Shown: positions 3,400 through 52,779 of the stretch, piece by piece | How positions within the stretch are numbered: the first letter of the stretch is position 1 | Layout: the number at the start of each line of letters is the position of its first letter | Origin: Mobula birostris | Lineage: Eukaryota | Length of the DNA: 64,000 nucleotides | Direction: 5' to 3' | Assembly: GCF_030028105.1 (NCBI RefSeq) | Contig: NC_092383.1 | Coordinates: 96,805,604 to 96,869,603 of the forward strand | The notes under the pieces: generated by a model | Seen by the model: the letters and a program-made list of their open reading frames with translations, nothing else | Database searches by the model: none | What the model was told of the DNA's origin: nothing | Translations under genes and position numbers: made by a program

Positions 3400-4500
3400 A
3401 ATTGAATTGAACTGACTTTGTTTTTTTACATCCTTCACATACACGACGAGTAAAAATCTTTACGTTATGTCTCCGTCTGAATGTGTAATGTGCAAATTAT
3501 AGTAATTTGTAATAAATAGCATGTAGAGTAAGATGTACAATAGAACAGTAAATATAGCTTAGAAATACAATTGTGTCAGCGTGAATTAATCAGTCTGATG
3601 GCCTGGTGGAAGAAGCTGTCCCGGAGCCTGTTGGTTCAGCCCCGTTTTGCATACCTGTCACTGTAAGTGTCCTGAATAGTGGGGAGTTCACATCCACAGA
3701 TGCGCCAGGCTGTCCGCGCCACTCTCTGTAGAGTCCTGCGATTGAGGGAAGTACAGATTGATAGAAACATAGAAAATAGGTGCAGGAGCAGGGCATTTGG
3801 TCCTTCGAGCCTGCACCGCCATTTATTATGATCATGGCTGATCATCCAACTCAGAACCCTGCCCCAGCCTTCCTTCCATACCCCCTGATCCCCGTAGCCA
3901 CAAGGGCCATATCTAACTCCCTCTTAAATATAGCCAATGAACTGGCCTCAACTGTTTCCTGTGGCAGAGAATTCCACAGATTCACCACTCTGTGTGAAGA
4001 AGTTTTTCCTAATCTCGGTCCTAAAAGGCTTCCCCTTTATCCTCAAACTGTGACCCCTCATTCTGGAAGCCAGTCAGGATGCTCTCAATTGTGCCCCTGT
4101 AGAAAGTCCTTAGGATCTGGGGGCTCATGCTAACCTTCTTCAACCATCTGAGATGAAAGAGGCACTGTTGTGTTTTTTTTCACTACACATCCGCTTTGTA
4201 CAGACCAAGTGAGATCCTCAGTGATGTGTATACCGAGGAACTTGAAGCTGTTCACCCTCACAACCCCAGATCCATTGATGTTAATAGGGGTTGTTAGTCT
4301 GTCTCCATTCCTAGTCCACAACCAGCTCCTTTGTTTTTGCAACATTGAGGGAGAGGTTACTTCTTGACATCACTGTGTCAGAGTGAGGGCTTCTCTGCAG
4401 GCTGCCTCATTATTATTTGAGATAAGGCCAATCAGTGTGGTATCATCTGCAAATTTAATTAGCAGATTGCAGTTGTGGGTGGTGACACAGTTATGGGTAT
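3400..4500 (-). mobile_element. Rex1-like LINE fragment with a nested CR1 (~3758-4072)
   Basis: RT-like text FKFLGIHITEDLTWS is interrupted by a catagaaacatagaaaataggtgcagg CR1 end. Confidence 0.65.
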
Positions 4501-9571: not shown

Positions 9572-9930
9572 GACAGGGTACCCCAGTGACTGGGAGTGTG
9601 GGGACAGGGTACCCCAGTGACTGGGAGTGTGGGGACAGGGTAACCCAGTGACTGGGAGTGTGGGGACAGGGTACCCCAGTGACTGGGAGAATGAGGGATT
9701 GCATACGCTGGTGACAGGATGTATGAGACAGGGATCCACAGTGACTGGGTGTGTGGGTACTGTACCCCAGTGACAGGGTGTGTGGAGGACAGTGTACCCC
9801 AGTGACTGTGTGTGTGTGTGGGTGCAGTGTATCCCAATGATTGGGTGTGGGGGACAGTGTACCCCAGTGACTGGGAGTGTGTGGGACAGTGAACCTCAGT
9901 AACCGGATTTGTGGGGGACAGTGCACTCAG
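9572..9930. repeat. 31-bp minisatellite gacagggtaccccagtgactgggagtgtggg and degenerate derivatives; also 35633-36090 and 63200-63530
   Basis: About 3.8 near-perfect units here, about 4.8 in unit 2, and a ~61-bp dimer array in unit 3. Confidence 0.9.
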
Positions 9931-10145
9931 TGACTGTGGGGTGTGTACAATTGCTGTTAGATCTGCCTGACCAGGCCTGGAGATCACTGAGGCAGAGTTT
10001 CAATTGACTCCTCAGTGGTACGTGGGATCTTGCTGTGCCCCCGTGTGTGCGCTGCTGAGTTCCGCAGTGGTGGTTGGAACGATCTCTGGTGATGGGGACC
10101 TGTGGTTGATCCTGGGATTGTGCAGATTACATGTAGGCCTTATGT

Positions 10146-12790: not shown

Positions 12791-12856
12791 TGTCCCGTTT
12801 TACACTCCTGGGACAGGAGATCTAACTAAATTGCAACATCTTCGTCGGACACTCAC

Positions 12857-13138
12857 GACATGTGTCCAGATTACAGACGTCCCCCAGCCAGACCTGTGCG
12901 GTGTCCTCACTGATGGGGTTTCTGGCCTCACACCTGTACACAACATCCTCCATCTCTGCTGTGCAATCAACCCGTATCGTCTTTCCGTCTTTCCAGATGT
13001 GATGGCTGCTGTTGTCTCCTGTAACTTCTCTCCACCAACTAAAGTTGGTGGGGTTGCCAGAGGTCACGGAGCAGGTCAGGGCGACGATACAGATTCCAGT
13101 GATGTTCTGAACAGTGATGTTTACTCCTGGCACGGGCT
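12857..13138 (-). CDS. Gene A exon 3, IgC2 domain
   Basis: EPVPGVNITVQNITGICIVALTCSVTSGNP...VDC...YRCEARNPISEDTAQV...VC, the SLAM-type two-disulfide Cys pattern. AG/GT boundaries, 282 nt, phase 1-1. Confidence 0.93.
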
Positions 13139-13749
13139 CTGAGGGTGTGAGAGAGAGATGAAAGATGAGTAAAGGAGATTCTTGAAAACAGCTCAATCCC
13201 CAACTCCCTGGTTCCATCCCCAACAGTCCAGAGTAAACTTCAAGCCAATCCCACCTCATTTTTACCCAACGATCCCTCACCCTTTTGTTCAGTCACTTGT
13301 TGCTGGAGGAAGTTCCCACGTGCTGAGCCCCCTTTCCCAAACACAACCCACAAACGCAATCGACAAACTCTCCATCATGTCCTGTTTATAGCACTCTATT
13401 CCAGGAATTCTCTCTATTCCCATGTCTTTTGTTCCTCCTGTGTGTGGTCCCGGCATCCCTTCGAAACCTGAGTGAGCTCAAGCCCTGACCTGCCCTAATC
13501 TGGTCCAACACAAGACACAGCCCACTCTATTCTGTCAGTCTCTCAATCTCCACTTTGCCTGCCCAGATTACGATGATGTCTTGAGATCCTGAAACCTGTG
13601 CCATTTCTTACGTCTCTGTTCTCACACCCTCTCCCACCGAAAGCAAGGAGAAGATTCCTCTGACCCTTTCCTTCTACCCCACTGGTCTCCACCTTCAGTG
13701 CATCAACATCTATGCTTCCTGGCCCTTTCAATGGGACTCCATTGAATCA

Positions 13750-14760: not shown

Positions 14761-16561
14761 TAACTCAGAAGTTCTAGTTGCTGTCACTTTGATTCTCCAT
14801 CCTGCTCCCACTCTGACACACTTATTCTGACTTCTGACACTATTCCAGTGAGACCAATGTATAGACAAGGGCCCATCTCCAGCTGGATCTGATGCAGAAC
14901 TTGCAGATCTCCCTCCTTTATAGAGATGATATTCAGAACAGGTTCATTGTCTGAAAGGTTTTGTTGACTACTGTCTGATTCAGAGAGTCATAGACTCCCA
15001 GAATACTACAGAACAGGAACAGGCCCTTCAACCCATCTAGTCCATGCCGATTTCTTAATCTGCCTTGTCACCTCAACCTGCACCCAAAACGTAGCCCCCC
15101 ACAACCATTCCATTCATGTACCTATCCAAATTTCTTTTAAATTTTGAAATCAAACTCACATACATCACTTCTGCTGGCAGATCATACAACATGCTCAGCA
15201 CACGTGGTAAAAGTTCCCCGTCATGTCCTCTTAAACATTTTGCCTTTCGCCCTAAGCCCATGACCTCTAATTCTACTCTGACCCAATCTCAGTGGAAAAA
15301 TCCTGCTTGCATTTATACGATCTGTATCCCTCATAATGTTGTAAACCTCAGTCCCTTTCTTCCCCTACTCGATCCCAGAGGAGGTCTTTGTCTCCAACCC
15401 ATATTCATGATTTTCTATCTTCTGTTTTCTATTTCCCATGTTCTGATGTTCTCCTCCTTCAACTGGTGAACATTAACACTGGGATGGAGGACGTTGTAAC
15501 GTGAAGTCAATGGAGAGACACCAAAGCTGGTGGATATAGAAATGTGTGATTCACCAAAAACAGGCATCATATTGAGACAATCTTGGAGGAAGCAGACTCC
15601 CGATTCAATATTACACAATAATTTGACATGCTAAAGATCAGTGGTAAATGCAGGATAATTGTACCGTTACAATGTACCAACAATGCTTCCTTGGCCCTAC
15701 ATAGATTTTTCACCTACCTTGTCGTTCACACCCACACTCCAGACACACAAAATGAATGTTAATCAGAATTGTCTGGTCTGCAATCAACTCCAGTCCACAG
15801 CTACAGGAAAACTATTGTTCAGAGCTGCATTTTAAATTCAATCTACAATCCACCTTCATGTCTGAAGATGGGTTGTGGTGAGATTAATGTTTGTGTATTC
15901 CCCAACTACACAATACGTCCTAACAGAGGAGAGAAGGTTTCTCAGCCAAACATTGCTGAGTGAGATTATTGTGAATGTGATATTACTGTTGGAGTGAGTC
16001 AGGAACCATATTGCTGTGTGTGAGTGTGCTGTTGTGTCCATGTACTGTGTCACTCACTGGGACACTATATTCAGTGTAATGAACACACAGGGTCTCACTC
16101 AGCACAGCACAGCATGAAGGCTGAGGAATAAACACCTTGCTGAGCTCAGACCTCAGTCTGGGAAATTAACAAGCAGTGTCCCGGGAAACAGACTGGATAA
16201 CTGGGATCCCTGAGCATGACAAACCGGGCCTTTGACTGGAGATACAGTGTGTAACTGTGACCCTCAGATACAGACTGTTCAGGCCATTCACACCAGGTCC
16301 ATTCTCCCTGTGTGCTGAGCTCCCTCTGTCTCAGATACATGAGATACCCCAATGTTGGTTCGATCCCTTCCGGCTCCTGTCTCAGTCTCGGTGGATATGA
16401 CGGGTGTATCCTCCAAACTCACACTGACTCACCCTCACTACACTGGGACCGTGAGCCCAGATCTGGACACGGGTAGTCAGTGGGGTTCAGTAAACAGGGA
16501 AACACACAGGATCTGCCCTCACCCATCCATTAGGGGTGTTTCAGGGACCGGTCTCACTCAC

Positions 16562-21620: not shown

Positions 21621-22300
21621 TTTCACCCCACACCAAATAAGAACAATAAAATCAGGAGGATTTTTGGTCCCTTGTTCCTGCTCCACAATCAATGAGACTA
21701 TGACTGATCTTTTATCTCATCACTATAGTCCTGACCAAAAGAACAGAAAAGCCAACATAAAGTGGTGGATATGGCCCAGTCCATCACAAGAAAAACCCTC
21801 CCCACCACTGAGCAGATCTACAAGGAGCACTGCGACAAGAAAGCAACGTGCATCATCAAGGACACCGACCATTCAGTCCATAATCTCCTTTCATTGCTGC
21901 TGTCAGAAAGGAGGTACGGACCTCAGGTTCCACACCACCAGGTTCAGGAACAGTTACACATCAGACTCCTGAACCAGCGTGGATAACTTCACACACCGCC
22001 ACTCTGAATTGATTCCACAACCTATGGACTCACTTTCAAGGATTTCATGTTGTAGAGCATATGAGGAGCATTTGATGGCTCTGGGTCTGTACTCACTGAA
22101 ATTTAGAAGAATGAGTGTAAATTTCAATGAAACCTATCCAATGTTGAAAGACCTCGACAGAGGAGGACATAAGAGAACGCTTCTTATGGTGTAGGGGTGT
22201 AGGACCAGAGGACACAGCCTCCGAATCTGTCAGTCAGTCAGCGGGTGCCATTCGAATCTGGGGTTGGCAGCTATGCACCTCCATCTTCTTCCATCTTGCG

Positions 22301-22478
22301 AAAGCACCGAGTACAGCCTCTCCTCCAGTTTGTTCTCGCTGGCCGCCTTGGCACTGCCCGCCGCCGCCCCTGCCGAACTCGTGCCCGAGGCTGTGTCGGC
22401 CTCCAGCCACGGCTGCTTCTTTGAGCTCGGCCCTTCTTCAGGCGGTGGCCTTGGGCAGGTCCAGGCACACGGTGCAGC
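22301..22478 (-). pseudogene. CYHR1: 178-bp circularly permuted fragment of the CYHR1/ZFTRAF1 coding sequence (unit 1)
   Basis: Encodes [10 protein letters not shown] first, then EEGPSSKK..LEA...[14 protein letters not shown]. The native motif, recalled from CYHR1, is [26 protein letters not shown]. Confidence 0.8.
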
Positions 22479-23447
22479 GCCCAAGCTCATCATGTCTCTT
22501 CTAACTAGGTGCGTAGCAAACGATTCGTAGATACGTGGTGAGGCTTTAATCTCTTCCACGGAAGATGGCCGTTGGCTCACAAGGAGCTCATCCGCCCTTT
22601 GTCAGGTCTTGTCTTTTTTCAGTCCTGCCGGGTGTCCTCACACCCTCCTCACCAGACGAAGTCTGGTGGGGGAGCCGGCCAAGTCCTCTACCCTGTTATA
22701 GTGACAAACAGGTCCCCAGCAGAGCTATACCTCGTTGTTATACAGTGATAGACCCGTGTCATGAGTACAAGTGCCAGGCGCCTGCCCCCAGCCTAATCTC
22801 TCCGAGCATCCAGCACCCGACTAAAAACCAATAGAGGAATAGTTCCTCCGAATAGAAGAACGTCAATTTACCCTGATCCGACACAAACTCCATTTTATTT
22901 TCCATTTGCCTCTTCCTCTGCCCACCTGATCAAACAATCTCATCTCCCCGAAGTCTGAAGATTTCGTACAACAAAGCAAGGAATTGAATGCTGGCCCTGT
23001 GGATTGTCAGTCAGGAGGGGATTAAAAAACTGTAGAACACTGAATGAGCCAGGGACAGGGGAAACAGTAAAAACAAATATATTCTCTGTAGTGGAAGGAA
23101 TGGAGGCAGCCATTTTATGTGTGTTCTCTGCGGCCACCATTTTGTGAGCTGGCTCCTCCCCGGGGACGGTTTGATCAGAGCAGCAAACAGTAGGTGCAGT
23201 GGGGTTGACAATCTGATAAATAAGAGATCATTTCCAAATAAAAAGCTGTTTTTGATTTCGTCAGACTGACAGGCTTATCAAAGAAACAGCCTGTGTGACC
23301 TGAGGAAGACTGAGCTGCGTATTTGGATGAACTGGGTTGAACAAAGGAAGTGACATGGGGCAAGAGCAATAAATTAATACTGTTTGTGGCCTTGTGCCAG
23401 ATCCAGTGAGAGGCTGGCACAGGTCAGTCAGATGAAACAGAGCCACT

Positions 23448-24689: not shown

Positions 24690-27600
24690 AGATGACCATG
24701 AGATCTAGGAGCACAATTAGGCCATTAAGTCTGCTCTGTCATTTCATCATGGCTGATCTATTTTTCCTCTCAGCCTCAATTACTTGCCTTCCCCTTTCAT
24801 GCTCTGCCCAATCAAAAATCTGTCAACCTCTGCCTGAAGTATATATAAAATATTGGCCTCCATGGCCACCTGTTGCAACAAATACCACAGATTCACCACT
24901 CTGTTGCGAAACAAATTCTTCCCCAACTCCATTCGAAAAGGATGCCAATCTATTTCGAGTATGTCCCTTCTGGTCTTCAAAACTCCAACCAGAGAAAAGA
25001 TCTTCTCCATATCCACTCTATCAAGGCCTTTTACCATTTGGTGGGATTTAATTAGGTCATCCCTCATTGTTCTAAATTCCATTAACTACAGGAACAGATC
25101 CATCAAACACTCTTCATATGATAAAGCTGATTTATCCTGGAACAATTTTCATGAACCTCCTTTGTTCCCTCTCCAGTTTCAGCACATCCTTTTTAAGATA
25201 AAGGCCCCAAAACTGCTCACAATACTCCAGGTGTGGTCTCACCAGGGCTTTATGAAGACTAAACATTTTATCCTTGCTTTTATATTGTAGTCCTCTTAAC
25301 GTGAATGCTGACAGACTTAACCTGCAAATTAACCTTTAGGGAATGCTATACAAGGACTCATAAATCTCTCAGCACCTCAGATTTTTGTATTTTCTCTCCA
25401 TTTAGAAAATCGTCAGCCCATTCATTTCTCCTACCAAAGTGCATGACCATGCACGTACCAACACTGTACGCTATCTACCACTTCTTTGCCCATTCTCCTA
25501 ATCTGAGTTCTTCTGTAACTCTATAGTTCCTCAAAACTACCTGCCCTACAGCTATCTTCATATCATATTCAATCTTTGCAACAAAGCCATCAATTCCACC
25601 ATCCAAATCATTGACATATAATGTAAGAAGAATTAGTCCCAACATAGGTCCCTGTGGAAAACCGATAGTCGCTGGCCGCCACCCAGAAAAGGCTCTCTTT
25701 ACTCCCACTTTTTGCCACCTGCCTATCAGCCATTGCTTTCAACATGCACGAATCTTTCTTGTAATACCATGGGCTCATACCTTGTTAAGCAGCCAGATGT
25801 GTGGCACCTTGTCAAAGGCCTTCTGAAAATCCGCGTGAAACACTTTGGTTCCGTCGGCTACGTAAGTCTAGGGAAGACAATCTCCAGCCCCACCAAACGT
25901 GTGAGATTGAGGTGCATGCCGACCCCAAAACCCCGTTTGAGTGGATGCTGCGTGAGCTGTTACCCTGTTACAAATAAGTACCACGAAATAACAGACAGTA
26001 CACTGCATACAATTAAATGATTTAAATTTATATTTTCTTAATTGACTAAAGGGTTCGTAAAGAAAAAGCAAAAAAAAAGAGACGACCCATTTTATTGAAC
26101 AGCCTAATGTGCACAAGTTGGAGCTCACGGTTTCCCCTTCGCTGATCTTCCTTCGATCTCCCTGGGTTTCATCGAATCATGGCCCCGCTCCAGGTCGAGT
26201 CCTACGACCTTTTCTCTCCAGTGTCTTCTCCCTTCATCTCCACCAAACCAAAGACCCAGCTCACACTGGTGTCAGGCACACAACACGAAAACTCACTCCC
26301 TTCATTGGACGGCTCAGATTCCAAAACACCCGTTATCACTAACCATAACCCAAACACTGCTTCTACAGAAAGACCATTACGTGAGCAGTGAACCCTTTCC
26401 CAGGGTGTTACACAAGTTTACAGCATCAACCAATTCTCCCTTGTCTGTCCTGCTCGTTATTTTTTCAAAGAATTCCAACAGATATGTCAGGCCAAAGTTT
26501 TCTTTGAGAAAACTATGCTGACTATGGCATATTTTATTATCTGCCTCCGAGTACCTCGAAAACACATCCTTAACAATCGAATCCAACATCTTCCCAACCA
26601 CTGAGGTCAGACTAATCGGCCTATAATTTTCTTTCTTCTGCTTCTCTCCTTTCTTGAAGAATGAAGTGTCATTTGCAATTTTCCTGTCTTCTGGAACCCT
26701 TAGAGAATCCAGTGATTTTTGAAAGATCATTACTAATGTCTCCACAATCGCTTCAGCTACCTCTATCAGAAACCTGGCGTGTAGACCATCTGTTCCAGGT
26801 GTCTTATCTACCATCAGACCTTTCAGTTTCCCAAGGACTTTTTCTCTACTCGTGGTAACTTTGCACATTACATGACCCCTGATACCTGGAACTTCCACCA
26901 CACTGCTAGATTCTTCCACAGTAAGACTGATGCAAAATACAGTTTGTCTGCCATTTCCTTGTCCCCAATTACAGTATCATTATTCAGTGGTCAATATCCA
27001 CTCTCACCTCTCTTTTACACTTTACGTATCTATATTATGATAACTTTGCCCTTAGGTTTCTTTTACCTTAAGCTCTCTGATCAATTCTGGTTCATTGCAC
27101 AACACCTAATCCGGAATAGCTGATCCCCTACTGGACTCAAACACAAGCTGCTCTAAAAAGCCATCTCGTATGCTAGAAATTCCCCCTCTTGGAATCCTGA
27201 TTTTCCCAATCTACTTGCATATTGAAATCCCTCATGACGACTGTAACATTGCCCTTTTGGCAACCATTTCCCATCTCCCATTATAACTTGTAGACCACAT
27301 CCTTACTGCTGTTTGGATGTCTGTAGATCACACCCATCAGGGTCTTTTTAACCTTGCGGTTCCTTAGCTCTATCCACAATGATTCATTGTCTTCTGAACC
27401 TAAATCACTTCTTTCTCATGATTTAATTTCATTTTTTGCCAACGGAGCCTCGCCACCACCTCTGCCTTCCTGCCTATTCTTTCAATGCATTGTGTAACCT
27501 TCGACATAAATGCAGCTATAATCATCATTCAGCCTGAATTCAGTGATGCCTACAACATCATATTTACCAATCTGTAACTGTGCTACAAGATTATCAACCT

Positions 27601-33558: not shown

Positions 33559-35866
33559 GAAAAATTTACAAACCTCCATGTCTATTCTGCTGCCCTATTG
33601 TAGATCTCCATCAGTGTCTTTGGATCTCTCCTACATCCATATCGAAAATCATTAATGTACGTTCAAAATTCAAAGTAAATTTATTATCAATTTACATATA
33701 TGTCACCGTATACAAACATGAGATTAATTCTCTTGAGGGCACACACAGTAAATCCAAGAAACACAATTGAATCAAAGAAACATCGCATCCAACGCACACA
33801 AATAGTGTCCAGCAACAACCCCTATTGGTCAAAACTGGCCATAGGCTTCCAAACACAAAAGCAACAGCCCACTATCACTCTCTGCCTCCTATTACCAAGC
33901 TCACTTTGTAATTAATGTACCAACTTGCTTGGATCCTAGGAGTTTAAACATTTGGACATGCCTTCCACATCCTAGTGAGGTGTAGAAAGCTCGAATGGTC
34001 ATGTGGGTGTATGAGATCACTGGACCAGATCCTGCACAACATGGTCGCTCCCCGTCTATGCTGTATTCCTGCATCGTTTATATTAAATCCCTGTCTCTCG
34101 TTCTCCTCACTTTCCAACAACTCCCTCTCCCTTAAACCCGAGACACATCCATATACTGGGAATCTTGGTCAACACACACTCCATGCTGGAGAAACTCAGC
34201 AGTTCAGGCAGCAGGCAGCCGATTCGTTGACTATTATTCTCCTGCAGAGATGCTGTCTGACGTGCTGAATACTTCCAGCACGTTGTGTGTGTTGTTGCTC
34301 CCTTACACCTTTCCATTTTTCTCCCTCCCTTAAATCCCTGTTCTCCACTGAGTCCCACCTCATAAACATTCCTCATAAATCCAATACCACCCTGAAATCT
34401 TCTCCCCTCCGCCCTCTTCCATCCCTTCCTGATTTCTGGCAGAAGGTTGACAGATTCTCTTGGATCCCCATCTTTCCCCAGTGATAATTCCGCACCCTCG
34501 GTGTGAACCAGTGTTTGAGAACTATTCACTCCAGATGGGAGAGTGGTGAGCATTTGGAAACTGGGCACAGGCTCACATTATTCATTTAATTATTAACTAC
34601 TGTTTGAGTAGCATTAATCAAGGTGATAATCTACAGGGGAACATTCTGACAAAATCTCTTCCACCAGACAAAACTGGAGAGTATTTTTGAACTAACATTC
34701 AACACTTACAAAGCACAGCAGCAAAGAGCAGCCATGCTGTTGTCCCATAGACCTCACCCCTCACTACGACAGTGGGACACAGAGGAAACCTGCATCTCCA
34801 AGCCACCGTCCCACATTCAGATCTCCCTGAGAGTCCGCACCCTCCTTGTGCTGGTGCTGAGGGAGGGACGATCCATCCTAGGCTACAGGATACTGTCCAG
34901 GGGTTCTGTCCTCAGCCCATCCATGGGGGGTCTGGCATGTTGCATCACTGCAGCATACTCAGTGGGATTAGTCTCGGCAACGACCTCCGGACCAGCAAAC
35001 TACAAAAGAAACAGAACCTGTCAGCTCTGGGCGATTTAAGGGAAACAGGGACAGGACACACTGTGTCAGGAATTCTTGGAGACTGGGAAACACAGACAGG
35101 GAAATAGAGTCCAGGACCCATTCAGGGAGATAGAGACCAGAACACAGAGACAGGACCTGGAGACAGCACACAGAGACAAGGAGATACAGACCAGGACCGT
35201 GGGACAGGGAGATACAGATGAGGACACAGAGGCATGGAGATTTAGACAAGGACACAGAAGCAAGGAGATACAGACCAGGACCGGGAGACAAGACACAGAC
35301 AGGGAGATATAGACCAGGACCTAGTAACAGGACATGGAGACTGGAGACAGAGACAAGGACTCTGGAGAGGGGAGACATTGAGACTGGGCACATCGACACG
35401 TGACACATGGACACAAAAGACCTGGACATGCAAAGCGACACACAATGATGGAAACTCAGATCACCCAGTCAGCACCAATCAACTGACAAACAATCATACT
35501 GACCCGGCATCAACACGGTCACACTCTCAGTGCATTCGGAATGAACTCACACACCGCCCATCGACACAAATATTAACACCACGACTGATCATCAGAAATG
35601 CACATACTACTGGGCATAACCTCATGTACAGCGACAGGGTAACCCAGTGACTGGGAGTGTGGGGACAGGGTACCCCAGTGACTGGGAGTGTGGGGACAGG
35701 GTAACCCAGTGACTGGGAGTGTGGGGACAGGGTACCCCAGTGACTGGGAGTGTGGGGACAGGGTAACCCAGTGACTGGGAGAATGAGGGATTGCGTACTC
35801 TGGTGACAGGATGTATGAGACAGGGATCCACAGTGACTGGGTGTGTGGGTACTGTACCCCAGTGAC

Positions 35867-35870
<4 letters not shown>

Positions 35871-35914
<44 letters not shown>
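35871..35914. repeat. (TG)22 microsatellite, unit 2 only
   Basis: Direct read. Confidence 0.95.
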
Positions 35915-35916
<2 letters not shown>

Positions 35917-36300
35917 GCAGTGTATCCTAGTGATTGGATGTGTGGGATATTGTACCCCAGTGACTGGGTGTGTGTGGGACAGTGAACCCCAGTGCTATGT
36001 GTGTGGGGAACAGTGTACCCCAGTGACTGGGAGTATGCGGGACATGAACCTCAGTAACCGGATTTGTGGGGGACAGTGCACTCAGTGACTGTGCGGAGAG
36101 TACAATTGCTGTTAGATCTGCCTGACCAGGCCTGGAGATCACTGAGGCAAAGTTTCAATTGACTCCTCAGTGGTACGTGGGATCTTGCTGTGCCTCCGTG
36201 TGTGCGCTGCTGAGTCCCGCAGTGGTGGTTGGAACGATCTCTGGTGATGGGGACCTGTGGTTGATCCTGGGATTGTGCAGATTACATGTAGGCCTTATGT

Positions 36301-36748: not shown

Positions 36749-37150
36749 CTATAATGCAGAGGAGAAAATATTTCCTAATGAGTAAACAGTCTCCTCAAGC
36801 TCAGCCTCCACCTCCCTGACCACTCGATGCCTCAGCCATCCGAAATAATCCTTCCATCCAATCTAATCACTCCCTCCCTCCAGCAACAGTGCACAGTTGA
36901 TTCAGTGTGGACCTTCTGCAAAATGTACTGCAGTTCTTCACCCAGTCTGTGCTGACAAATATGAGCAGAGGCCTGAGTATAAAATACAAAAAATGAAGGT
37001 TGCCGATAAAGTAAATGGTTCTCTACAGTATCCTCTCAAACAGTGTCAGAGTGCTGAATAGATACAAACTGAAGCTCCTCTGTGCTGCCCCATCTCACAC
37101 TCCTGAGACGGGGAGATAACTAAATCCAAACTTCATCCTCTGACACTCAC

Positions 37151-37435
37151 GACGTGTGTCCAGATTACAGACGTCCCCCAGCCGGACCTGTGCGGTGTCC
37201 TCATTGATGGGGTTGCTGGCCTCACACCTGTACACAACATCCTCCATCTCTGCTGTGCAATCAACCTGTATCATCTTTCCGTCTTTCCAGATGTGATGGC
37301 TGCTGTTGTCTCCTGTAACTTCTCCTCTCCACCAATTGAATCTGGAGGGGTTGCCAGAGGTCATGGAGCAGGTCAGGGTGAGGTTACAAGTCCCAGTGAT
37401 GTTCTGAACTGTGATGTTTGCTCCTGACACGGGCT
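37151..37435 (-). CDS. Gene B exon 3, IgC2 domain
   Basis: EPVSGANITVQNITGTCNLTLTCSMTSGNP...YRCEASNPINEDTAQVRLGDVC. 285 nt, phase 1-1. Confidence 0.93.
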
Positions 37436-38797
37436 CTGAGGGTGTGAGGGAGAGATGAAAGATGAATAAAGAAGATCCTTGTGGACACCTCGATCCCCAA
37501 CTCCCCCATCCCACCCCCAACACTCCAGAGTGAACTTCAAGCCAATCTCACCTCATTTTTACCCAACGGTTTAACCCTTCCCTCACCAGTCACTTGCTGC
37601 TGGAGGAAGTTCCCACGTGCACTACCCACACTCATCGACAAACTCTCCTCCATTTCCTGTTTATAGCTCTCTATTCCAGGAATTCTCTCCATTTCCATGT
37701 CGTTAGTTACTCCTGTGTGTGGTCCCAGCATCCCTTCGAAACCTGAGTGAGTCCCAGCCCCAACCTGCCCTGAATCTGGTCCAACACAAAACACAGCCCA
37801 GTCTATTCTGTCATTCTCTCCATCTCCACTCTGCCTGCCCAGATTATGATGAAGGCTTGAGTCTGTGTCATTTCTTTCATCTCTGTTCTCACACCCTCTC
37901 CGACCAAAAGCACCAATACGGTTCCTCTGGCCGTCTCCTTCTACCCCACTCTCCTCCCCATTCAGTGCATCAACATCTATGATTCCTGGCCTTTCAATGA
38001 GACTCCATTGAAACATAGAGCATTGCAGTGTCAAAACAAACCCTTCAGTCCATCTAGCCCATTCCTAGTCCCATTGTTACACATCTGGACATCACCTTCC
38101 ACATCCCTCCCAGTATTTATCCAAATTTCTGTTAGACATTGAAAACAAACCTGGTTCCAACCCTTCCACGTGCAACTTGTTCCACCCCGAGTGAAGAAAT
38201 TCCCCCACCTTCCCCTATAACTCTGGTCCTCAAGTCCTGATACTCTGCACTCTTTCAATCTTATTGATACTTTTCCCGTAAGTAGGTGACCAGAATTGCA
38301 CAAATACTCCAAATTAGGCCTCTCCAAGGTCTTATACAATTTCAACATAACATCCCAACTCCTATACTCAATACGTTGATTTATGAAGCTTTTTCATGAT
38401 GACCCGATCTACCTGTGACACCACTTTCAAGAAATTATGGTTTTCCATTCCCAGATCTCTCTACTCTACTACACTCTTCAGTGCCCAATTGCTCCTCATT
38501 TAAGTCCCACCCTGGTTTAGTTCCCAAAGGTCAAGGCTTCATACTCGTCTGCATTAAATTCCATTTGCCAATTCTGAGTCAGTAGTTCGAGTTGCTGTCA
38601 CTTTGATTCTCTATCCTGCTCCCACTCTGACACACTGATTCTGATTTCTGACATTGCTCCAGTGGAGATCATTGAATGGACGAGGGCCCGTCTCCAGCAG
38701 GATCTGATGCAGTACGTGGGGCTCTCTCTCCTTTTATAGAGCTGATGTTCAGAACAGTTTAACCAGCTGAAGGGTTTCTTTGACAACTGTCTGATTC

Positions 38798-41700
38798 TGT
38801 CAATACCTCCAGTTGAACTGTCTTTTTGTGTGTTTCCCCCTAGCCGTCAGTCTGTGGTTTTGTATTTCCATGTGCTCTTGTTTGTTTTCATGCCTCATGT
38901 GTTCCTGTCCCCGCTCCTGCTCTACCTGGCCCCGGTATTACTGAGTACTCCGTCTCTCACCTGTTTCTCATTATTACCTGTATTGCTGCCCCCTGTGTCT
39001 CATTGTGCTCCACCTATCATCTGCCTCTCTGTTTATTGCTCAGTGTATTTCAGTCCTGTGTTTTCACCTGTTTATGGCCAGATTGTGCCAATGAATTTTC
39101 CTGAGCCTTTCCAGCATTTGTATCTGTACTCTGTCTGTCTGAATATCAACTCTGCCTGTTTGCTGATTCTGGTTTTTGGATTTCTCTGGAACTTCTGATC
39201 AATGCATGAACTTTGACACTGACCTTGTTTGCACCTTGGGATTTGTAACTCAATAATATCACTGTGTGCACAGTACTGGGTCTGTGATTGGATCCCTGCT
39301 CCAGTGTCCCGACAGTACAATCTGGACAGAATGGAACCAACAGACCCTGGTTGTCTGAGAGCTGCCCTGGAACAATTGGGAGTGATGCTGGTGAGACCCC
39401 AGAACCAGCTGGAGTCGGTGTTCAGGGCAGCGGAGTCGGTTTCTGCTGATGTAGCCCCCCTTGTGGCCCAGGCTCAGTCACTCCAGCTGCCCCAGAGCAT
39501 CCATCAACATTCTGTCACTGCATCTTCTACCCCACCCTCTGTGTCCCCGCGTGCTCCTCCTGTCCAAAAGCCCTGTCTGCCTCCTCCAGAAAGGTACTCA
39601 GGTGAGCCCGGTACCTGTCGCTCTTTACTTTCCCAGTGCACCCTCATTTTTGAATTACAACCAACAACATTTCTGACTGATCGAGCCAAGGTAGCCTACA
39701 TCATCACCCAACTGTCTGGTTGGGCGAGAGAATGGAGAACAGCTGTCTGGGAGGCAGGTTCCCCTTTCTGCTATAGTTTTCAGTTATTTTCTGAGGAGAT
39801 GAGAAAAAGTGTTTGATTACTCCAAATATGGGAGAGACACTGCCCATGAAATGCTGCACATGCATCAGGGGTGCAGATCTGTGTCAGATTACGCCATAGA
39901 GTTCCACCTCCAGTGGCTGGAACTCGGAGGCACAGTACGACACCTTCCTGAACGGCCTCTCCGAAGACATCAAAGATGAGCTGGTCACCCAGGAGCTTCC
40001 TGTGACCTTTGAAGCCCTGGCGAATTTGGCCATCCGTATTGATGTTCGCTTTCAGCAGCGCTGCAGAGCGAGGGGTTCCAAGCTCCTCGTCAGTCTACGT
40101 TACCCTGCTGTTTGACCTCATCTACAATTCCCGTACCAGAGCCCGAGGCTCTGCACGTTGACTGTACCCGCCTGAGGCCGACTGAAAGACAAAGGAGAAT
40201 CAGCACCCGCTCCTGTCTGTACTGTGGCCAACCAGGACATTTCATCTCCACCTCATCTCCATTGAATCTCCATTTCATCTCCAAGTGCTCACCAGTAGGA
40301 TGAGGAGTATTGGTGAGCGTGACCCCTGTCTGGCCCTCCTTGATGCCACTCACTCTCATACCTGCTTCTCTGGAGTGGGACACCCAACAGCGAGCAGTCT
40401 CCATCCTGGTCAACTCTGGTGTGGAGGGGTGTTTTATCGATTCTGGGTTGGCTGCCCAGTGGGGATTATCCACATCTGCTCTCCAGTCACCATTGATGAA
40501 CAATGCCTTGAACGGTCAGAGACCGGCTGATATCACCCATGTCACGGCCCCAGTGAGTCTCAGTTTATCTGGCAACCATCATGAACAGTTAACCCTTTAT
40601 GTTATTGACTCCTCAAACTCCTATTGTCCTGGACATCCCTGGTTAGTTAAACACAACCCCCACATTGACTGTCCCAGTCACAGGTTTGTAGGCTGGAGCC
40701 CATTCTGTCACTCCCACTGTCTCCGCCATGCTCAGATCCCCTTGTCTCCAAGCCCAGATCCCCCTCGAGGAATTCCGGACCTTAATGCCATCCCTCCTCA
40801 AGGCTGTATTCAGCAAGTCCCGGGCACTTCCCTGCCGCCTCATCGTCCATATGATTGTGCCACTGACCCCTTGCCTGACACATCTTCCCCAAGGGGAGCC
40901 TGTATTCCCTGTCTGTACCTGAAACAGAAGCCATGAATAAGTACATTCAACAGTCCCTGGCTGCAGGCATCATCCAGCCGTCTTCCTCCCCTGCTGGTGC
41001 CGGTTTGTTCTTTCTTGAAAAGAAGGACGGCTCCTTGCGTCCATGCATTGATTACCGGGGACTGAATGAAGTCACTGTTAAGAACCGTTTCCCTCTTCCA
41101 CTCATGACCTCGGTGTTTGAACTACTGCAAGGAGACTCAGTTTTCACCAAGCTTGATCTCCGTAACGCCGACCATCTTGTCCGCATGCGCAAAGTGGACA
41201 AGTGGAAGAGAGCCTTCAACACCACCTCAGGCCATTACGAGTATCTGGTTATGCCATTTGGTCTCACCAATGCCCTGGCCGTCTTCCAAGCCCTGGTAAA
41301 TGACGTTCTCAGGGACGTGCTGAACCAATTTGTTTTTGTGTATCTCGACAACATTTTGATTTATTTTCTAAGGCCCTTGCTGAGCACACAGGTCATGTCC
41401 ACAGTGTTTTCCAGCCCCTTCTGGAGAATCAGATCTTTGTGAAGGCTGAGAAATGTGAGCTTCATCGCAATACAGTCTCCTTTCTGGGGTATGTAATTCC
41501 AGGCGGTTCCATTCAGATGGACCAACAGAAGGTCAAGGCAGTGGTCAAAAGGCCTCCATCTTTGACTTGTCAGGAGTTGCAACGCTTCTTGATTTTGGTA
41601 ACTTCTATTGCCGCTTCATCAGAAATTACAGTACACTGGCTGTATCCCTCACTGCTTTACGTCATTGCCTGTCAGATTACCTGATCCCCTGCTGCTGAAA

Positions 41701-42998
41701 AAGCATTCTCTGACCTGAATGAATGTTTCTCCTCTGCCCCCATCCTGATTCAACACGAAACCAACTGGCAGTTCATTCTGGAGGTGGACACATCTGACAT
41801 TGGTGTAGGAGTTGTTCTCTCTCAGCGTTCGGCCAAGGATGAGAAGGTACACCTCTGCACATTCTTCTCTCACCGCTTCACTCCCACCGAGCGGAATTAC
41901 GATGTTGGAAACCGGGAACTGCTGGCTGTGAAGCTCGCTCTGGAGGAGTGGAGGCATTGGCTGGAGGGAGCCAAGGTGCCATTCTTAGTCTGGACTGATC
42001 ACAAGAATCTGGAATATATCCATATGGCCAAGCACCTCAACTCCCGTCAAACTTGTTGGTCCCAGTTTTTCTCAAGATTCAATTTTACTCTGTCCTTCTG
42101 CCCCGATTCCAAGGATGGAAAACCTGATGCCCTCTCCTGAAGATTTCCTTCCACTAAGACCCCTGAGGTACCTGATGTCATCCTCCCTGCTCACTGTCTC
42201 ATGGGTGCAGTGCAAAGGGACATTGAATCCATTGTGTAAGTTGCTCAACAGATCAAGGCAGCCCCTAGTCAATGCCCCACTAATCGTGTTGATGTTCCCA
42301 GCTCTGTCCGCTCACAGGTATTGCAGTGGGGTCATTGATCCCAGTTATCCTGTCACCCTGGAACCAAGCGTACTCAGGCCTTCATCAGTCGGCGGTTTGT
42401 ATGGATTCCACCCACAGACCAACGGCCAGACCGAGTGGGCAAACCAACAGCTGGAGACTGTATTGCGGTGCCTGGCCTCCCAGAACCCCTCCACGTGGAG
42501 TCAGCAGCTACCCTGGGACGAGTACGCCATAAACTCTCATCCGTCCTCTTCCACTGGTCTGTCCCCCTTCGAGTGCTGCCTTGGCTAGCAACCTCCACTG
42601 TTTCCTGCCCAGGAGGAGGAGGTTGGCGTTCCATCTGCCGAGGCATTCATCCGCTGTTGTCAGTGGACATGGAGGCACACTCGCTCTGCCCTTCTCCGTG
42701 CCTCCGCTAGGATCAAGCGTCAAGCTGACCGCCATCGCTGCAAGGCCCCACGTTACCATGAGGGACAGCGTATGTGGCTTTCAACCCGAGACCTGCCCCT
42801 CCAGGTGGATTCCTGAAAGTTCACCCCCCTGTAACATCCTGGACCTCTCTCTCATCACCCCACCTGTAACATCCTGGACCTCTCTCTCATCAGGGACTTT
42901 TGACGTCAGCACCCAGCTCTACCTGTTGTGATGCCAGGAGGTGTATGTAGAGGTGAGGGAACTGTCAGTACCTCCAATTGAACTGTGTATTTGTGTGT
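38798..42998 (+). mobile_element. Degenerate Ty3/Gypsy (Sushi-like) LTR retrotransposon, unit 2 only
   Basis: 5' LTR TGT...ACA at 38798-39314. gag from 39331 (PPERYSGEPGTCR..AKVAYIITQLSG; knuckle CLYCGQPGH), protease LVNSG, RT VYLDNIL, RNase [15 protein letters not shown], integrase HPQTNGQTE. Many frameshifts. Purine tract, then a 36-bp 3' LTR stub at 42963. Confidence 0.92.
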
Positions 42999-44183
42999 CC
43001 TTTCACCCTTAACCCATGACCTCTAATTCTACTCTGACCCAACGTCAGAGGGAAAAGCCTACTTGCAATTACATTATAAATATCCCTCAATTTTGTAAAC
43101 CTCAATCCCTTTCTTCCCCTACTCGATCCCAGAGGAGGTCTCTGTCTCCAACCCATGTTCATGATTTTCTATCTTCTGTTTTCTATTTCTCATCTTCTGA
43201 TGTTCTCCTCCTTCAAATGGTGAATATTAACATGAGGATGAAGAATGTTGTAAGGTGAAGTCACCAGAGAGACACCAAAGCTGCTGGATATAGAAATGTC
43301 TGATTTCCAAAAACAGGCATCATATTGAGACAATCTTGAAAGAAACGGCCTCCTGACCCAATATTACATAATACTGTGACATGCTAAAGGTCAAAGGTTA
43401 ATGCAGGATTATTGTAAAGTTACAATGTACCAACAATGCTTCCTTGGCCTTACATATATTTTTCACCTACTTTGTCATTCACACCCACACTCCAGACGCA
43501 CAAAATGAATGTTCATCAGAATTGTCTGGTTTGCAATCAACTCCAGTCCACAGCTACAGGAAAACTACTGTTCAGAGCTGCATTTTAAATTCAATCTACA
43601 ATCCACCTTCATGTCTGAAGATGGGTTGTGGTGAGATTAATATTTGTAATTCCTTAACTGCACAATGTGCCCTAACAGAGGAGTAATTCAGTGTAATGAA
43701 CACACAGGGTCTCACTCAGCACAGCACAGCACAGCATGAAGGCTGAGGAATAAACACCTTGCTGAGCTCAGACCTCAGTCTGGGCAATTAACAGGCAGTG
43801 CCTTCTGAAAATGGGATCACTGAGCATGACAGACCAGGCCTTTGACTGGAGATACAGTGTGTAACTGTGACCCACAGATACAGACTGTTCAGGCCACTCA
43901 CACCAGGTCCATTCTCCCTGTGTGCTGAGCTCCCTCCGTTTCAGATACATGAGATTCCCCAATGTTGGTTCAATCCCTTCCGGCTCCTGTCTCAGTCTCA
44001 GTGAATGTGACGGGTGTATCACACTGACTCAGCCTCACTACACTGGGACCGTGAGCCCAGCTCTGGACACGGGTAGTTAGTGGGGTTCAATAAACAGGGA
44101 AACACAGAATCTGCCCTCACCCATCCATTAGGGGTGCTTCAGGAACTGGTGAAACCCAGGCCCCTCCGCGGTGTCTCACTCAC

Positions 44184-49760: not shown

Positions 49761-50420
49761 TAAGAACAATAAAATCAGGAGGATTTTTGGCCCCTTGTTC
49801 CTGCTCCACAATCAATGAGACTATGACTGATCTTTTATCTCATCACCACAGTCCTGACCAGAAGAATAAAAAAGCCAACATAGAGTGGTGGATATGGCCC
49901 AGTCCATCAGAAGAAAAACCCTCCCCACCACTGAGCAGATCTACAAGGAGCACTGCGACAAGAAAGCAACGTGCATCATCAAGGACCCCGACCATCCAGT
50001 CCATAATCTCCTTTCATTGCTGCTGTCAGAAAGGAGGTACGGACCTCAGGTTCCACACCACCAGGTTCAGGAACAGTTACACATCAGACTCCTGAACCAG
50101 TGTGGATAACTTCACACACCGCCACTCTGAATTGATTCCACAACCTATGGACTCACTTTCAAGGATTTCATGTTGTAGAGCATATGAGGAGCATTTGATG
50201 GCTCTGGGTCTGTACTCACTGAAATTTAGAAGAATGAGTGGAAATTTCATTGAAACCTATCGCATGTTGAAAGACCTCGACAGAGGACATAAGAGAACGC
50301 TTCTTATGGTGTAGGGGTGTAGGACCAGAGGACACAGCCTCCGAATCTGTCAGTCAGTCAGCGGGTGCCATTCGAATCTGGGGTTGGGGGCTATGCACCT
50401 CCATCTTCTTCCATCTTGCG

Positions 50421-50598
50421 ACAGCACTGAGTACAGCCTCTCCTCCAGTTTGTTCTCACTGGCCGCCTTGGCACTGCCCTGCGCCGCCCCTGCCGAACTT
50501 GAGCCCGAGACAATGTTGGCCTCCAGCCGCGGCCGCTTCTTCGAGCTCAGCCCTTCCTTAGGCGGAGGCCTTGGGCAGGTCCGGGCATACGGTGCAGC
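50421..50598 (-). pseudogene. CYHR1: 178-bp circularly permuted CYHR1/ZFTRAF1 fragment (unit 2)
   Basis: CTVCPDLPKAS, then KEGLSSKKRPRLEA...KLEERLYSVL. The end GTGCTGT plus the start GCTGCACC restores VLCCT exactly. Confidence 0.8.
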
Positions 50599-52779
50599 GC
50601 CCAAGTTCATCATGTCTCTTCTAACTAGGTGCATAGCATACGATTCGTAGATACGTGGTGAGGCTTTAATCTCTTCCACGGAAGATGGCCGTTGGCTCAC
50701 AAGGAGCTCATCCGCCCTTTATCAGGTCTTGTTTTTTTTTAGTCCTGCCGGGTGTCCTCACACCCTCCTGAACAGTCCAAATCCAGTGTGGGAGCCGGCC
50801 AAGTCGCTGATCAATTGACCACAGCGCCCGATCGAATGTCGGGCACCCATCCCCAGCCGAATCTCTCCGAGCGTCCAGCGCCCTACCGAAAACCAATAGA
50901 GGAATAGAGGAATAGTTCCTCCGAAAAGAAGAACGTCAATTTACCCTGATCCAACACAAACTCCATTTTATTCGCCATTTGCCTCTTCCTTTGCCCACCT
51001 GATCAAACAATCTCATCTCCCGGAAGTCTGAAGCTTTCTTACAACAACCCAAGGGATTGAATATAGACCCTGTGGATTGTCAGTCATGAAGGAAATAAAA
51101 AACTGTAGAACACTGAAAGAGCCAGGGACAGGGGAAACAGTAAAAACAAATATATTCTTTGTAGTGGAAGGAATGGAGGCTGCCATTTTATGTGTGTTCT
51201 CTGTGGCCACCATTTTGTGAGCTGGCTCCCTCCTGGGGTCGGTTTGATCAGAGCAGCAAATAGTAGATGCAGTGGGGTCGAAAATCTGATAAATAAGAGA
51301 TCATTTCCAAATAAAAAGCTGTTTTTGATTTCATCAGACTGACAGGCTTATCAAAGAAACAGCCTGTGTGACCTGAGGAAGACTGAGCTGCGTATTTGGA
51401 TGAACTGGGTTGAACAAAGGAAGTGACATGGGGCAAGAGCAATAAATTAATACTGTTTGTGGCCTTGTGCCAGATCCAGGGAGAGGCTGGCACAGGTCAG
51501 TCAGATGAAACAGAGCCACTGAAATCGAAACACAACAGTTTAATCGACAAGGCAGAGAATATGAATGAAGGGTTTCAGCGACACAAGAAGTGTGTGACCT
51601 TGGTGAAAGTCTTGCAAAGTTGTAACATGGTGGCAGGAAGTGGTTGAGGCTGTGAAACAGAAAATGGTGCTGGAGTCCAGCTGTCTCTGGAGTGAGAGAG
51701 AAAACACATACAGATGGGCAGCAGGAAGCTCTGCTGTCTCACAACTCCAGCAAACCCAGTTTAAACCTGGTTTTAGATTCCATCTGTGTGGAGTTTGCAT
51801 GTTCTCCCAGTGAAGGCTCAGTTTACCCCGGGTGATCCCATTTCCTCCCAGATTCCAAAGAGACAAGGGCGGTGGGTTAATTGGCCACTATAAATTGCCC
51901 CCACTGAGAGGGTGTGGGGTAGAATGTGGGGGAGGTGATGGGATGAATGAAATGGTATTGCTGTAAAGTGGTGTTTGATGATCGGTGTTCACTCATGGAT
52001 CAAAGGGCCGGTTTCGGTGCTGTTTGACCCCATGGACGGCAGAGGAATTCAGAGAATGGACAAGGCAGCTGAGAGAGCAGCAGACAGAGACGTTGAAGGA
52101 GACAAAGAGCTTCCTGGATGGGAATTCCCAGTGAGAGAGCTCGAGAATGTCTCCGGAGAAGAAAGAAACAGCGGGAGGGATGGAGTTGTCAGTGCTTTCT
52201 GATTCAGGGTGTGGACAAGCAGAGAACCCAGGAGTGACTACAATGATGATGGGTCTGCTCACCCACTCAACAAGTCTCAAACATATGTTCCAGCTCTCTA
52301 CTCAGAGTCCCCCATTACAACTGGTCTTGCCCACCAAGCAGACATGAGAGAGCACAGAGGAGGGAGGGGCCCCACCACGTACAGACTCTACATCTGCTTC
52401 TGGAACAATGGCGGCGTGCTCAGACACAGCGGCCACTCCGGTGTATTTGTTCATCCTGTACGTCTATTTTACATCCACAAGTCAATGCCGGAGACTCAGG
52501 ACATCAGTTACTGCTGGACTACCCCATTAGCGACTTGCTTGATATTGATGGAGCTGGACTTGTTGCGTAAATTTGTGCCCAGACTGTGCGCAGTCCTAAA
52601 AAGGTATGGTTGATTGCCTTGGACATTTAGTATAGTGATAGCAAGACCCTGTTGGACAACAAATACTGCAAGTTTAGTTTACTCATTCTTTGGAGAGACC
52701 AATGGCGGGGGAGTTGCATTGACTTAGTTGTTACGTGAACAAGATGTGCTGCTGGATCTCCAGATGACCATAAGATCTA

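What the first reader, a model, noticed from the sequence alone, without database searches (positions are those of the whole stretch)
22301..22478. Exactly circularly permuted 178-bp CYHR1 exon fragment: a possible fossil microDNA integration
Seen: on the minus strand the fragment reads [10 protein letters not shown](S/T) (36 nt) and then jumps back to PEEGPSSKK..LEA...[10 protein letters not shown] (142 nt). In the unit-2 copy (50421-50598), joining the 3' end GTGCTGT to the 5' start GCTGCACC rebuilds GTG CTG TGC TGC ACC (VLCCT) with no base lost or gained. Known (recalled): CYHR1/ZFTRAF1 contains [26 protein letters not shown], and microDNAs are ~100-400 bp GC-rich circles enriched from exons and CpG islands. 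Inference: a nucleosome-sized DNA circle excised from the CYHR1 exon was opened at a new point and integrated in the germline before the tandem duplication. The internal junction falls mid-exon, ~8 nt before the expected YQ end, which argues against a back-spliced circRNA. No TSD or poly(A) is visible.
Basis: partly seen in the sequence, partly recalled or inferred. Interest (0 to 1): 0.85.

Follow-up and report, generated by a model that had tools for sequence, protein, structure and literature searches.

The report
Order-swapped host exon piece inside retroposon
A 178-base piece of a host gene's first coding exon, with its two halves exactly swapped as if copied once around a small circle, is real, but it reached this site as cargo inside an ordinary jumping-gene copy, not as a free DNA circle.

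Summary
On the minus strand, 22301-22478 and its copy at 50421-50598 read [10 protein letters not shown](T/S) and then PEEG...[10 protein letters not shown]. Rotating the fragment gives one ungapped match to the first coding exon of a conserved vertebrate RING gene. In more than 50 orthologues this exon runs on to VYQ|GT, so the internal join lies 8 nt short of the conserved splice donor.

The claim that a microDNA integrated at this site is not supported. The fragment is internal to a ~604-bp retroposon (22229-22832, minus strand). Its reading frame ends inside a (CTGA)3 tail, which is an RTE hallmark. It has a candidate target-site duplication, and it interrupts a CR1-like element on the other strand. 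That single insertion was later copied with the ~28-kb tandem unit.

The swap therefore predates arrival here. It most likely records one full turn of a closed 178-nt template taken into the retroposon lineage. The opening point sits in the loop of the circle's strongest hairpin. Whether the circle was RNA or DNA is unresolved.

The scan had already noted the same swapped fragment on other pieces of this genome (s1-145109, s1-145151, s1-145244) and 68.7 kb downstream (s1-145736). I could not read those copies.

The parts
22301..22478 (-). Permuted 178-nt host exon fragment, unit 1. Short piece B is 22443-22478 (Cys-Cys...KAT plus G, 36 nt). Long piece A is 22301-22442 (PEEG...LYSVL plus T, 142 nt).
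50421..50598 (-). The same fragment in tandem unit 2. It differs from unit 1 at 20 of 178 positions, 10 of them in CpG context.
22229..22832 (-). Retroposon insertion carrying the fragment (RTE-like LINE 3' portion, about 604 bp). The 5' end could lie at 22844 if only the 9-nt core CCTCCGAAT is duplicated.
50349..50905 (-). The same retroposon insertion in unit 2. It is shorter because of indels in its 5' part.
22230..22580 (-). 116-codon open frame running from retroposon sequence (..SVEEI..HLVRRDMMSLG) through the fragment into ..SQDGRRWRCIAANPRFEWHPLTD*. Its stop codon lies inside the terminal repeat. The frame is also open in unit 2 (50350-50700).
22229..22241 (-). (CTGA)3C terminal simple repeat, the 3' end of the retroposon. 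The 3' UTR is at most 3 nt.
   Evidence: RTE features in PMC2887409
22207..22226 (+). Left copy of the candidate target-site duplication (AGAGGACACAGCCTCCGAAT). It is also the end of the host CR1-like reading ..RTRGHSLRI.
22833..22853 (+). Right copy of the candidate target-site duplication (AGAGGAATAGTTCCTCCGAAT). The host CR1-like reading resumes after it (FLRI-EERQF..).
21979..22228 (+). Host element that was hit: a CR1-like LINE ORF2 C-terminal remnant (..LGLYSLKFRR..RTRGHSLRI), cut off exactly at the retroposon tail.
22470..22475 (-). Hairpin arm GCACCG. It pairs with CGGTGC at 22304-22309. In native order these arms form a 6-bp stem with a 6-nt loop, and the circle's opening point lies at the centre of that loop.

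Best explanation
The 178-nt fragment is passenger sequence inside a 5'-truncated RTE-like retroposon copy. That copy inserted once, by ordinary target-primed reverse transcription, into a CR1-like remnant. It was later duplicated along with the ~28-kb tandem unit. These steps are shown by the anatomy. The order swap happened earlier, in the retroposon's RNA lineage; this step is inferred. A closed 178-nt template from the middle of the host gene's first coding exon was read or ligated in for exactly one turn. It was entered or opened in the loop of its strongest hairpin, in sense orientation, and it took the place of a similar length of the retroposon's 3' coding region. I favour an RNA-level event. 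One route is the retroposon's reverse transcriptase switching onto a small RNA circle and stopping when it meets its own cDNA. Another is RtcB-type ligation of a re-opened RNA circle into cleaved retroposon RNA. The RNA circle would have formed by cryptic back-splicing or by ligation of a cleavage fragment. The fragment has no expected function here and is decaying as methylated CpG-rich DNA.
For: Exact permutation. Retroposon anatomy: the reading frame ends inside the (CTGA)3 tail, which matches the RTE description of an extremely short simple-repeat 3' UTR, truncated 3' copies and TSDs up to 20 bp (PMC2887409). Candidate TSD: only 6 of 500 shuffles score as well. CR1-like homology on the other strand stops at 22227, next to the tail (E = 7.5e-7). 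It aligns across the junction once the insert plus one TSD copy is removed (E = 0.014). Both tandem units share the same insertion and flanks. The fragment is in sense orientation and keeps the frame between upstream and downstream retroposon coding sequence. The opening point lies at the centre of a perfect 6-bp stem with a 6-nt loop; only 5 of 178 positions do as well, and 38 of 5000 shuffles. Precedents: circRNA-derived pseudogenes amplified with retroelements (PMC4897178), and RtcB-made U6/L1 chimeric RNAs that retrotranspose (PMC6789731). Scan notes report the same fragment in an RTE context on other pieces of the genome and another RTE-host mRNA chimera; I did not verify these.
Against: No significant sequence match ties the flanks to any LINE family. 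Only motif-level resemblance to RTE/Rex3 C-termini printed in a paper supplement was seen. The two TSD copies differ at about 5 of 21 positions. DNA continuity of the host element on the right side is not significant. No second copy of the retroposon family is in the window, so spread by retrotransposition rests on unverified scan notes. The join is not at a conserved splice site, which weakens the circRNA route. LINE reverse transcriptases normally jump onto 3' ends, and a circle has none. The replaced region includes the G.RPRGRP..RW motif that is conserved in the RTE/Rex3 C-termini, so the chimera was probably not autonomous.
Confidence: 0.55

Rival explanations
1. A double-stranded DNA microcircle (microDNA) was excised from the CpG-rich first exon, linearised, and captured by end joining at a break inside a genomic RTE copy. 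That copy was then transcribed and retrotransposed, and one daughter landed here.
For: The fragment is 178 bp, 66-67% GC, carries 14 CpG and derives from a 5' exon. This fits the published microDNA profile of 100-400 bp, GC-rich, enriched in 5' UTRs, exons and CpG islands (PMC8194206). Both circle ends lie mid-exon. A single cut of a circle gives exactly one unit length without further assumptions. A hairpin or cruciform loop is a plausible nuclease target.
Against: This route needs a deletion of similar size in the RTE copy, plus sense orientation (1 in 2) and frame retention (1 in 3) by chance. It also needs that particular copy to be expressed and mobilised. Germline reintegration of microDNA is not documented in the papers I read.
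Confidence: 0.2
2. One reading: a DNA circle integrated directly at this chromosomal site, into an RTE fragment already resident here, before the tandem duplication. Copies elsewhere would then be segmental duplicates of this region.
For: The circle-like features are the same as for the first rival. The window holds only this one insertion, in two tandem copies.
Against: The fragment has no junction features of its own. It exactly replaces a stretch of coding frame inside the retroposon and stays in frame. Three scan notes place it on other pieces of the genome, two of them described as inside an RTE LINE and with a different length of 166 nt.
Confidence: 0.1
3. No circle was involved. One version is that two adjacent cleavage products of the exon RNA, still held together by the hairpin stem, were copied in the wrong order by serial end-to-end template jumps. 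Another is that the source exon carried a tandem duplication from which a B-A stretch was captured.
For: The break lies in a hairpin loop whose stem could keep the two pieces together. Dong et al. warn that structured open-ended RNAs with apposed ends can mimic circle junctions (PMC4897178).
Against: This needs three specific cleavages and three ordered jumps. The tandem-duplication version needs entry and exit points exactly one unit apart, roughly 1 in 178 by chance. None of 56 orthologous exons shows such a duplication.
Confidence: 0.12
4. The resemblance to the host exon is chance, or the 110-nt lineage-specific part is not from the same exon.
For: Only about 65 of the 178 nt can be verified against orthologues. 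The remainder gives no significant alignment.
Against: There is a 22-residue contiguous match after rotation, E = 4.4e-5 against 5.8 billion sequences. The DNA match is ungapped at 55/62 and 57/65. The motif order is colinear with orthologues.
Confidence: 0.02

Closest known systems
circRNA-derived pseudogenes (Dong et al. 2016, PMC4897178)
   Same: Both are genomic copies with a non-colinear junction in reversed order and no poly(A) of their own. The mouse circRFWD2 copies are multi-copy and associated with retrotransposon sequence.
   Different: There the junction is an exon-exon back-splice. Here both junction ends lie inside the first coding exon, 8 nt short of the conserved donor. The copy is exactly one turn and is embedded in the coding 3' end of a LINE-type element.
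LINE chimeric retrocopies (U6/L1 chimeras made by RtcB ligation, PMC6789731; template-switch chimeras, from my own knowledge)
   Same: In both, host RNA is joined in sense orientation to LINE RNA and inserted by the LINE machinery with a TSD.
   Different: Known chimeras join the host RNA to the 5' side of a truncated LINE and are colinear. Here the host piece is internal, flanked on both sides by retroposon sequence, and circularly permuted.
microDNA / small eccDNA (Shibata et al. 2012, as summarised in PMC8194206)
   Same: Size (178 bp), high GC content, and origin in a 5' exon or CpG island.
   Different: microDNAs are known as extrachromosomal molecules. This is a chromosomal copy inside a retroposon with TPRT hallmarks. 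The microhomology at the source junction cannot be checked here.
5'-truncated RTE-clade LINE copies (PMC2887409)
   Same: The reading frame runs into a very short simple-repeat 3' UTR, only the 3' end of the coding region is present, and the copy is flanked by a TSD.
   Different: No significant sequence match to RTE proteins was obtained. The usual conserved C-terminal stretch is replaced by host exon sequence.

Membership tests
First coding exon of ZFTRAF1/CYHR1 (source of the fragment) | Contiguous match to the exon sequence ..[22 protein letters not shown].. after rotation | tested here: met
   E = 4.4e-5; 55/62 and 57/65 nt, ungapped across the join
First coding exon of ZFTRAF1/CYHR1 (source of the fragment) | All 178 nt colinear with the same species' exon | not testable with these tools
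Comparison with teleost exons was not significant for the first 110 nt.
First coding exon of ZFTRAF1/CYHR1 (source of the fragment) | Gene name confirmed by an annotated database entry | tested here: inconclusive
   The hits are unnamed or labelled 'hypothetical protein'. A spliced relative has Sina_RING PF21362. The name rests on recall.
RTE-clade LINE, 5'-truncated copy | Single reading frame ending in an extremely short 3' UTR made of simple repeats | tested here: met
   The stop codon lies inside (CTGA)3, at most 3 nt before the flank. Criterion taken from PMC2887409.
RTE-clade LINE, 5'-truncated copy | Target-site duplication flanking the copy | tested here: inconclusive
   A 20-21-nt match with a 9-nt perfect core; 6 of 500 shuffles score as well. 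The two copies differ at about 5 positions. The host reading aligns across the reconstructed empty site at E = 0.014, but DNA continuity is not significant.
RTE-clade LINE, 5'-truncated copy | Sequence homology of the coding flanks to RTE-clade ORF C-termini | tested here: not met
   No hits. BLASTP against Rex3 C-terminal segments gave nothing. Only colinear short motifs seen by eye against (L.Y..E, L.RRV.G, HLVR, D.RRW).
RTE-clade LINE, 5'-truncated copy | Many dispersed copies with different flanks | not testable with these tools
   Only scan notes are available. No other copy is in the window. Public scans found nothing.
circRNA-derived pseudogene | Non-colinear junction in reversed order | tested here: met
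circRNA-derived pseudogene | Junction coincides with exon boundaries (back-splice donor joined to acceptor) | tested here: not met
   In 56 orthologues the exon runs 8 nt further to VYQ|GT and begins at the start codon well upstream of PEEG. A cryptic GT/AG pair cannot be excluded without the source locus.
microDNA-derived insertion | 100-400 bp, GC-rich, from a 5' exon or CpG island | tested here: met
   178 bp, 67% GC, 14 CpG. Criterion taken from PMC8194206.
microDNA-derived insertion | Short direct repeat or microhomology at the source junction | not testable with these tools
   Source locus unavailable. An imperfect repeat, CCTGAAGAAGGGCC and CCTGCCCAAGGCC, lies near the two circle ends, but both copies are inside the circle (and my reading).
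microDNA-derived insertion | Free fragment joined directly to chromosomal DNA at this site | tested here: not met
   Both sides of the fragment are retroposon sequence within one open frame. The whole unit carries a tail and a TSD.

The most novel reading that the evidence does not exclude
The fragment is a germline fossil of a small circle that was not made by splicing. It would be either a nucleosome-sized DNA microcircle or a ligase-closed RNA circle from a CpG-island first exon. The circle was opened in a hairpin loop, copied or ligated for exactly one turn into a LINE-type element, and then carried around the genome by it. That would be natural evidence that such circles can re-enter the germline, with a retroposon as the vehicle.
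Probability: 0.3. Interest if true: 0.7.

Novelty: new variant of a known kind. Interest (0 to 1): 0.4.

Why it matters
At this site the finding is ordinary: one retroposon insertion that was later duplicated. The cargo is the unusual part. Known circle-derived retrocopies carry back-splice junctions, and known LINE chimeras are colinear 5' fusions. Here there is an exactly one-turn, mid-exon circle junction embedded in the coding 3' end of a LINE-type element. If the source locus and other copies confirm it, this gives a testable natural case. It bears on how a reverse transcriptase or RNA ligase handles a small circle, and on whether microDNA-like circles ever return to the germline.

Tried and rejected
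- **Protein searches on the 116-aa frame:** the word-index search and the exhaustive representative search both found nothing.
- **Atlas look-alikes:** searches with piece A and with the upstream flank returned only chance bacterial and viral clusters.
- **Other library searches:** PDB and Pfam on the frame gave nothing. Rfam on 21800-23200 gave only a sub-threshold archaeal snoRNA hit, taken as chance, and no HDV-like ribozyme.
- **First TSD guess:** AGATTCGG..GCTG at 22789-22800 scores below the shuffle mean, so I dropped it in favour of 22833-22853.
- **Host CR1 continuity to the right of the insert:** not significant by DNA alignment.
- **Other copies in the window:** none of the retroposon or its flanks.
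- **Public scans:** searches for the tail and for the fragment/retroposon junction found no matches in metagenome contigs or viral contigs.
- **Scan look-up by sequence:** blank.
- **Folding of the 178-nt RNA:** linear and circular folds show no exceptional overall stability, z = -1 to -2.
- **BLASTP of the flanks against Rex3 C-terminal segments from a paper supplement:** no alignment.
- I did not build a profile from the RTE sequences in that supplement, because it would have required typing long sequences into a call.

Full report
**The observation**

One frame gives [10 protein letters not shown](T/S)A and another gives (PP)PEEGPSS...[10 protein letters not shown]. Joining the fragment's 3' end to its 5' start gives ..[16 protein letters not shown].. 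in frame.

It returned three natural ORFs (E = 4.4e-5 to 3e-4). Each starts with Met and reads ..[26 protein letters not shown], followed by V and then junk. These are first coding exons read through into the intron.

A second search seeded with one of them gave 56 such ORFs, teleost-like and mammal-like. All end VYQ followed by V, which is the GT of the donor. One genomic locus shows CAG|GTAAAC and, further on, an exon encoding MCAGCFIHLLAD..CPNCRC. A spliced relative carries a Sina-type RING domain.

At DNA level the rotated fragment aligns to that locus as one ungapped block of 62-65 nt across the join (55/62 and 57/65). Unrotated it aligns over only 31 nt. So the permutation is real and exact at the join, and the internal junction lies 8 nt short of the conserved donor.

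There are three limits:
- Only about 65 of the 178 nt can be verified. The first ~110 nt of the long piece are lineage-specific, and one search found no significant alignment to teleost exons. The motif order is still colinear with orthologues.

**What surrounds the fragment**

The window is a tandem array with units of ~27-28 kb at about 94% identity. The fragment and at least 200 bp on either side are shared by two units at the same relative position. This is therefore one insertion that was later duplicated.

The fragment is a GC spike of 66% in a ~45% background. It lies inside a 116-codon open frame on the minus strand (22230-22580), which is also open in unit 2. That frame reads ..SVEEIKASPRIYESFATHLVRRDMMSLG, then the 178 nt, then SQDGRRWRCIAANPRFEWHPLTD*. 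The stop codon lies inside a terminal (CTGA)3 repeat. The same frame, with two stops, continues upstream.

Right after the repeat, the opposite strand carries the C-terminal coding remnant of a CR1-like LINE (..LGLYSLKFRR..RTRGHSLRI). Its homology to another CR1-like copy in the window stops at 22227, next to the tail (E = 7.5e-7).

I searched the 820 nt upstream for the 24 nt that follow the tail. The best match was ATTCGGAGG..CT.T.TCCTCT at 22833-22853, and at the matching place in unit 2. Only 6 of 500 shuffles scored as well. When the 604-bp insert and one repeat copy are removed, a CR1 peptide aligns across the junction (GHSLRIKGKPFRTEIR against GHSLRIEERQF-TLIR, E = 0.014). DNA-level continuity on that side is not significant, and the two repeat copies differ at about 5 of 21 positions. 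I therefore call the TSD a candidate.

The combination seen here is a frame running into a near-zero simple-repeat 3' UTR, only the 3' part of a coding region, and a flanking duplication. That is how truncated RTE-clade copies are described (PMC2887409).

Sequence-level membership failed. There were no hits for the frame or its flanks and no BLASTP alignment to Rex3 C-terminal segments. By eye there is only a colinear series of short motifs (L.Y..E, L.RRV.G, HLVR, D.RRW) shared with the RTE and Rex3 C-termini printed in that paper's supplement.

In those sequences the stretch between GH..R and DR..W holds a conserved G.RPRGRP..RW motif. In the window that stretch is replaced by the host fragment. 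The chimera was therefore probably not autonomous.

**How it got here and how the swap arose**

Arrival at this site is best read as ordinary target-primed reverse transcription of a retroposon RNA that already carried the fragment. The fragment has retroposon sequence on both sides, lies in sense orientation, and keeps the frame.

Scan notes report the same swapped fragment on three other pieces of this genome (a manta ray, according to a follow-up note). Two of those notes describe it as inside an RTE LINE, with a length of 166 nt. A further note lies 68.7 kb beyond this window. The last position fits four more tandem periods of ~27.6 kb, so it is probably this same insertion. I could not read any of these copies, so spread by retrotransposition remains unverified.

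The exactness is the informative feature. Entry and exit points on a repeated or circular template would coincide to the base only about once in 178 by chance. A mechanism that enforces unit length is therefore needed. Three candidates are:
- a single cut of a closed circle followed by joining;
- a reverse transcriptase that goes once around an RNA circle and stops at its own cDNA;
- re-ligation of cleavage products.

One new detail bears on this. In native order the opening point lies at the centre of the 6-nt loop of a perfect 6-bp hairpin (CGGTGC / GCACCG), the strongest local stem in the circle. Only 5 of 178 positions do as well, and 38 of 5000 shuffles. This test was post hoc. A loop is where a nuclease would cut, or where a primer end could anneal. 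Overall folding is unremarkable.

I favour an RNA-level event for two reasons. The fragment is in sense orientation within a retroposon lineage. LINE chimeras by RNA ligation and template switching are established (PMC6789731), as are circle-derived retrocopies amplified with retroelements (PMC4897178).

A DNA microcircle captured in an RTE copy remains a serious rival. The junction is mid-exon, and the size, GC content and 5'-exon origin fit microDNA (PMC8194206). A cryptic back-splice is still possible: GT follows ..CC in orthologues, and AGG-CCT would fit an Arg-Pro reading upstream. The source locus would settle it.

**State of the copies**

The two tandem copies of the fragment differ at 20 of 178 positions (11.2%). 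Ten of these are in CpG context. The flanks differ by 2.7-7.4%. This is the decay expected of methylated CpG-rich neutral DNA, not of a conserved element.

**Verdict**

The site-specific microDNA reading is not supported. The circle-like origin of the cargo stands, but RNA versus DNA is unresolved. This is a new variant of known kinds (chimeric LINE retrocopies and circle-derived retrocopies) and of moderate interest. The scan had already noted it on other DNA of this genome.

Noticed in passing
window 38797-42999 (+): About 4.2 kb is present in tandem unit 2 but absent at the matching place in unit 1 (14981-15243). Its ORFs carry a gag-like DUF4939, an aspartyl protease and RVT_1. It looks like an LTR-retrotransposon fragment inserted after the duplication, or lost from unit 1.
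   Followed up: partly
window 22695-22788 vs 50806-50853: The 5' part of the retroposon differs sharply between the two otherwise ~94% identical units. Unit 1 has about 50 extra bases with an internal direct repeat (CACTGTATAACAA / CACTATAACAGG). Unit 2 has mostly unalignable sequence. This is unexplained.
   Followed up: no
window 22387-22397 vs 22211-22221: An 11-nt perfect inverted repeat (GACACAGCCTC) links the inside of the host-exon fragment in unit 1 to the target-site flank 165 nt away. Unit 2 differs there by a cluster of 4 changes within 8 nt. It could be chance (about 0.05 expected) or a templated multi-base change.
   Followed up: no
window 9572-9945, 35633-36044, 63181-63534: A 31-bp-period minisatellite of about 12 copies at 75% match recurs once per tandem unit.
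   Followed up: partly
window 12825-13280 (-) and 37095-37523 (-): ORFs with immunoglobulin-domain matches (Ig_3 / ig) recur in each unit at only ~85% identity. This fits the scan's notes of an immune-receptor gene array.
   Followed up: no
window 24700-25200 (-), 26380-26919 (-), 3850-4085 (-): Further CR1-like LINE remnants are present (..RGHSLRIKGKPFRTEIRKNFFTQ / RVVNLWNSLPQETVEA..), with a weak RVT_1 match upstream of one. One is nested against another LINE type.
   Followed up: partly
window 22427-22461 vs 22591-22608: The sequences on either side of the circle junction (CCTGAAGAAGGGCC and GACCTGCCCAAGG) both resemble one upstream retroposon site (GACCTGACAAAGGGCGGA), at 13/16 and 11/13. 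This is possibly chance, or possibly a homology patch relevant to template switching.
   Followed up: no
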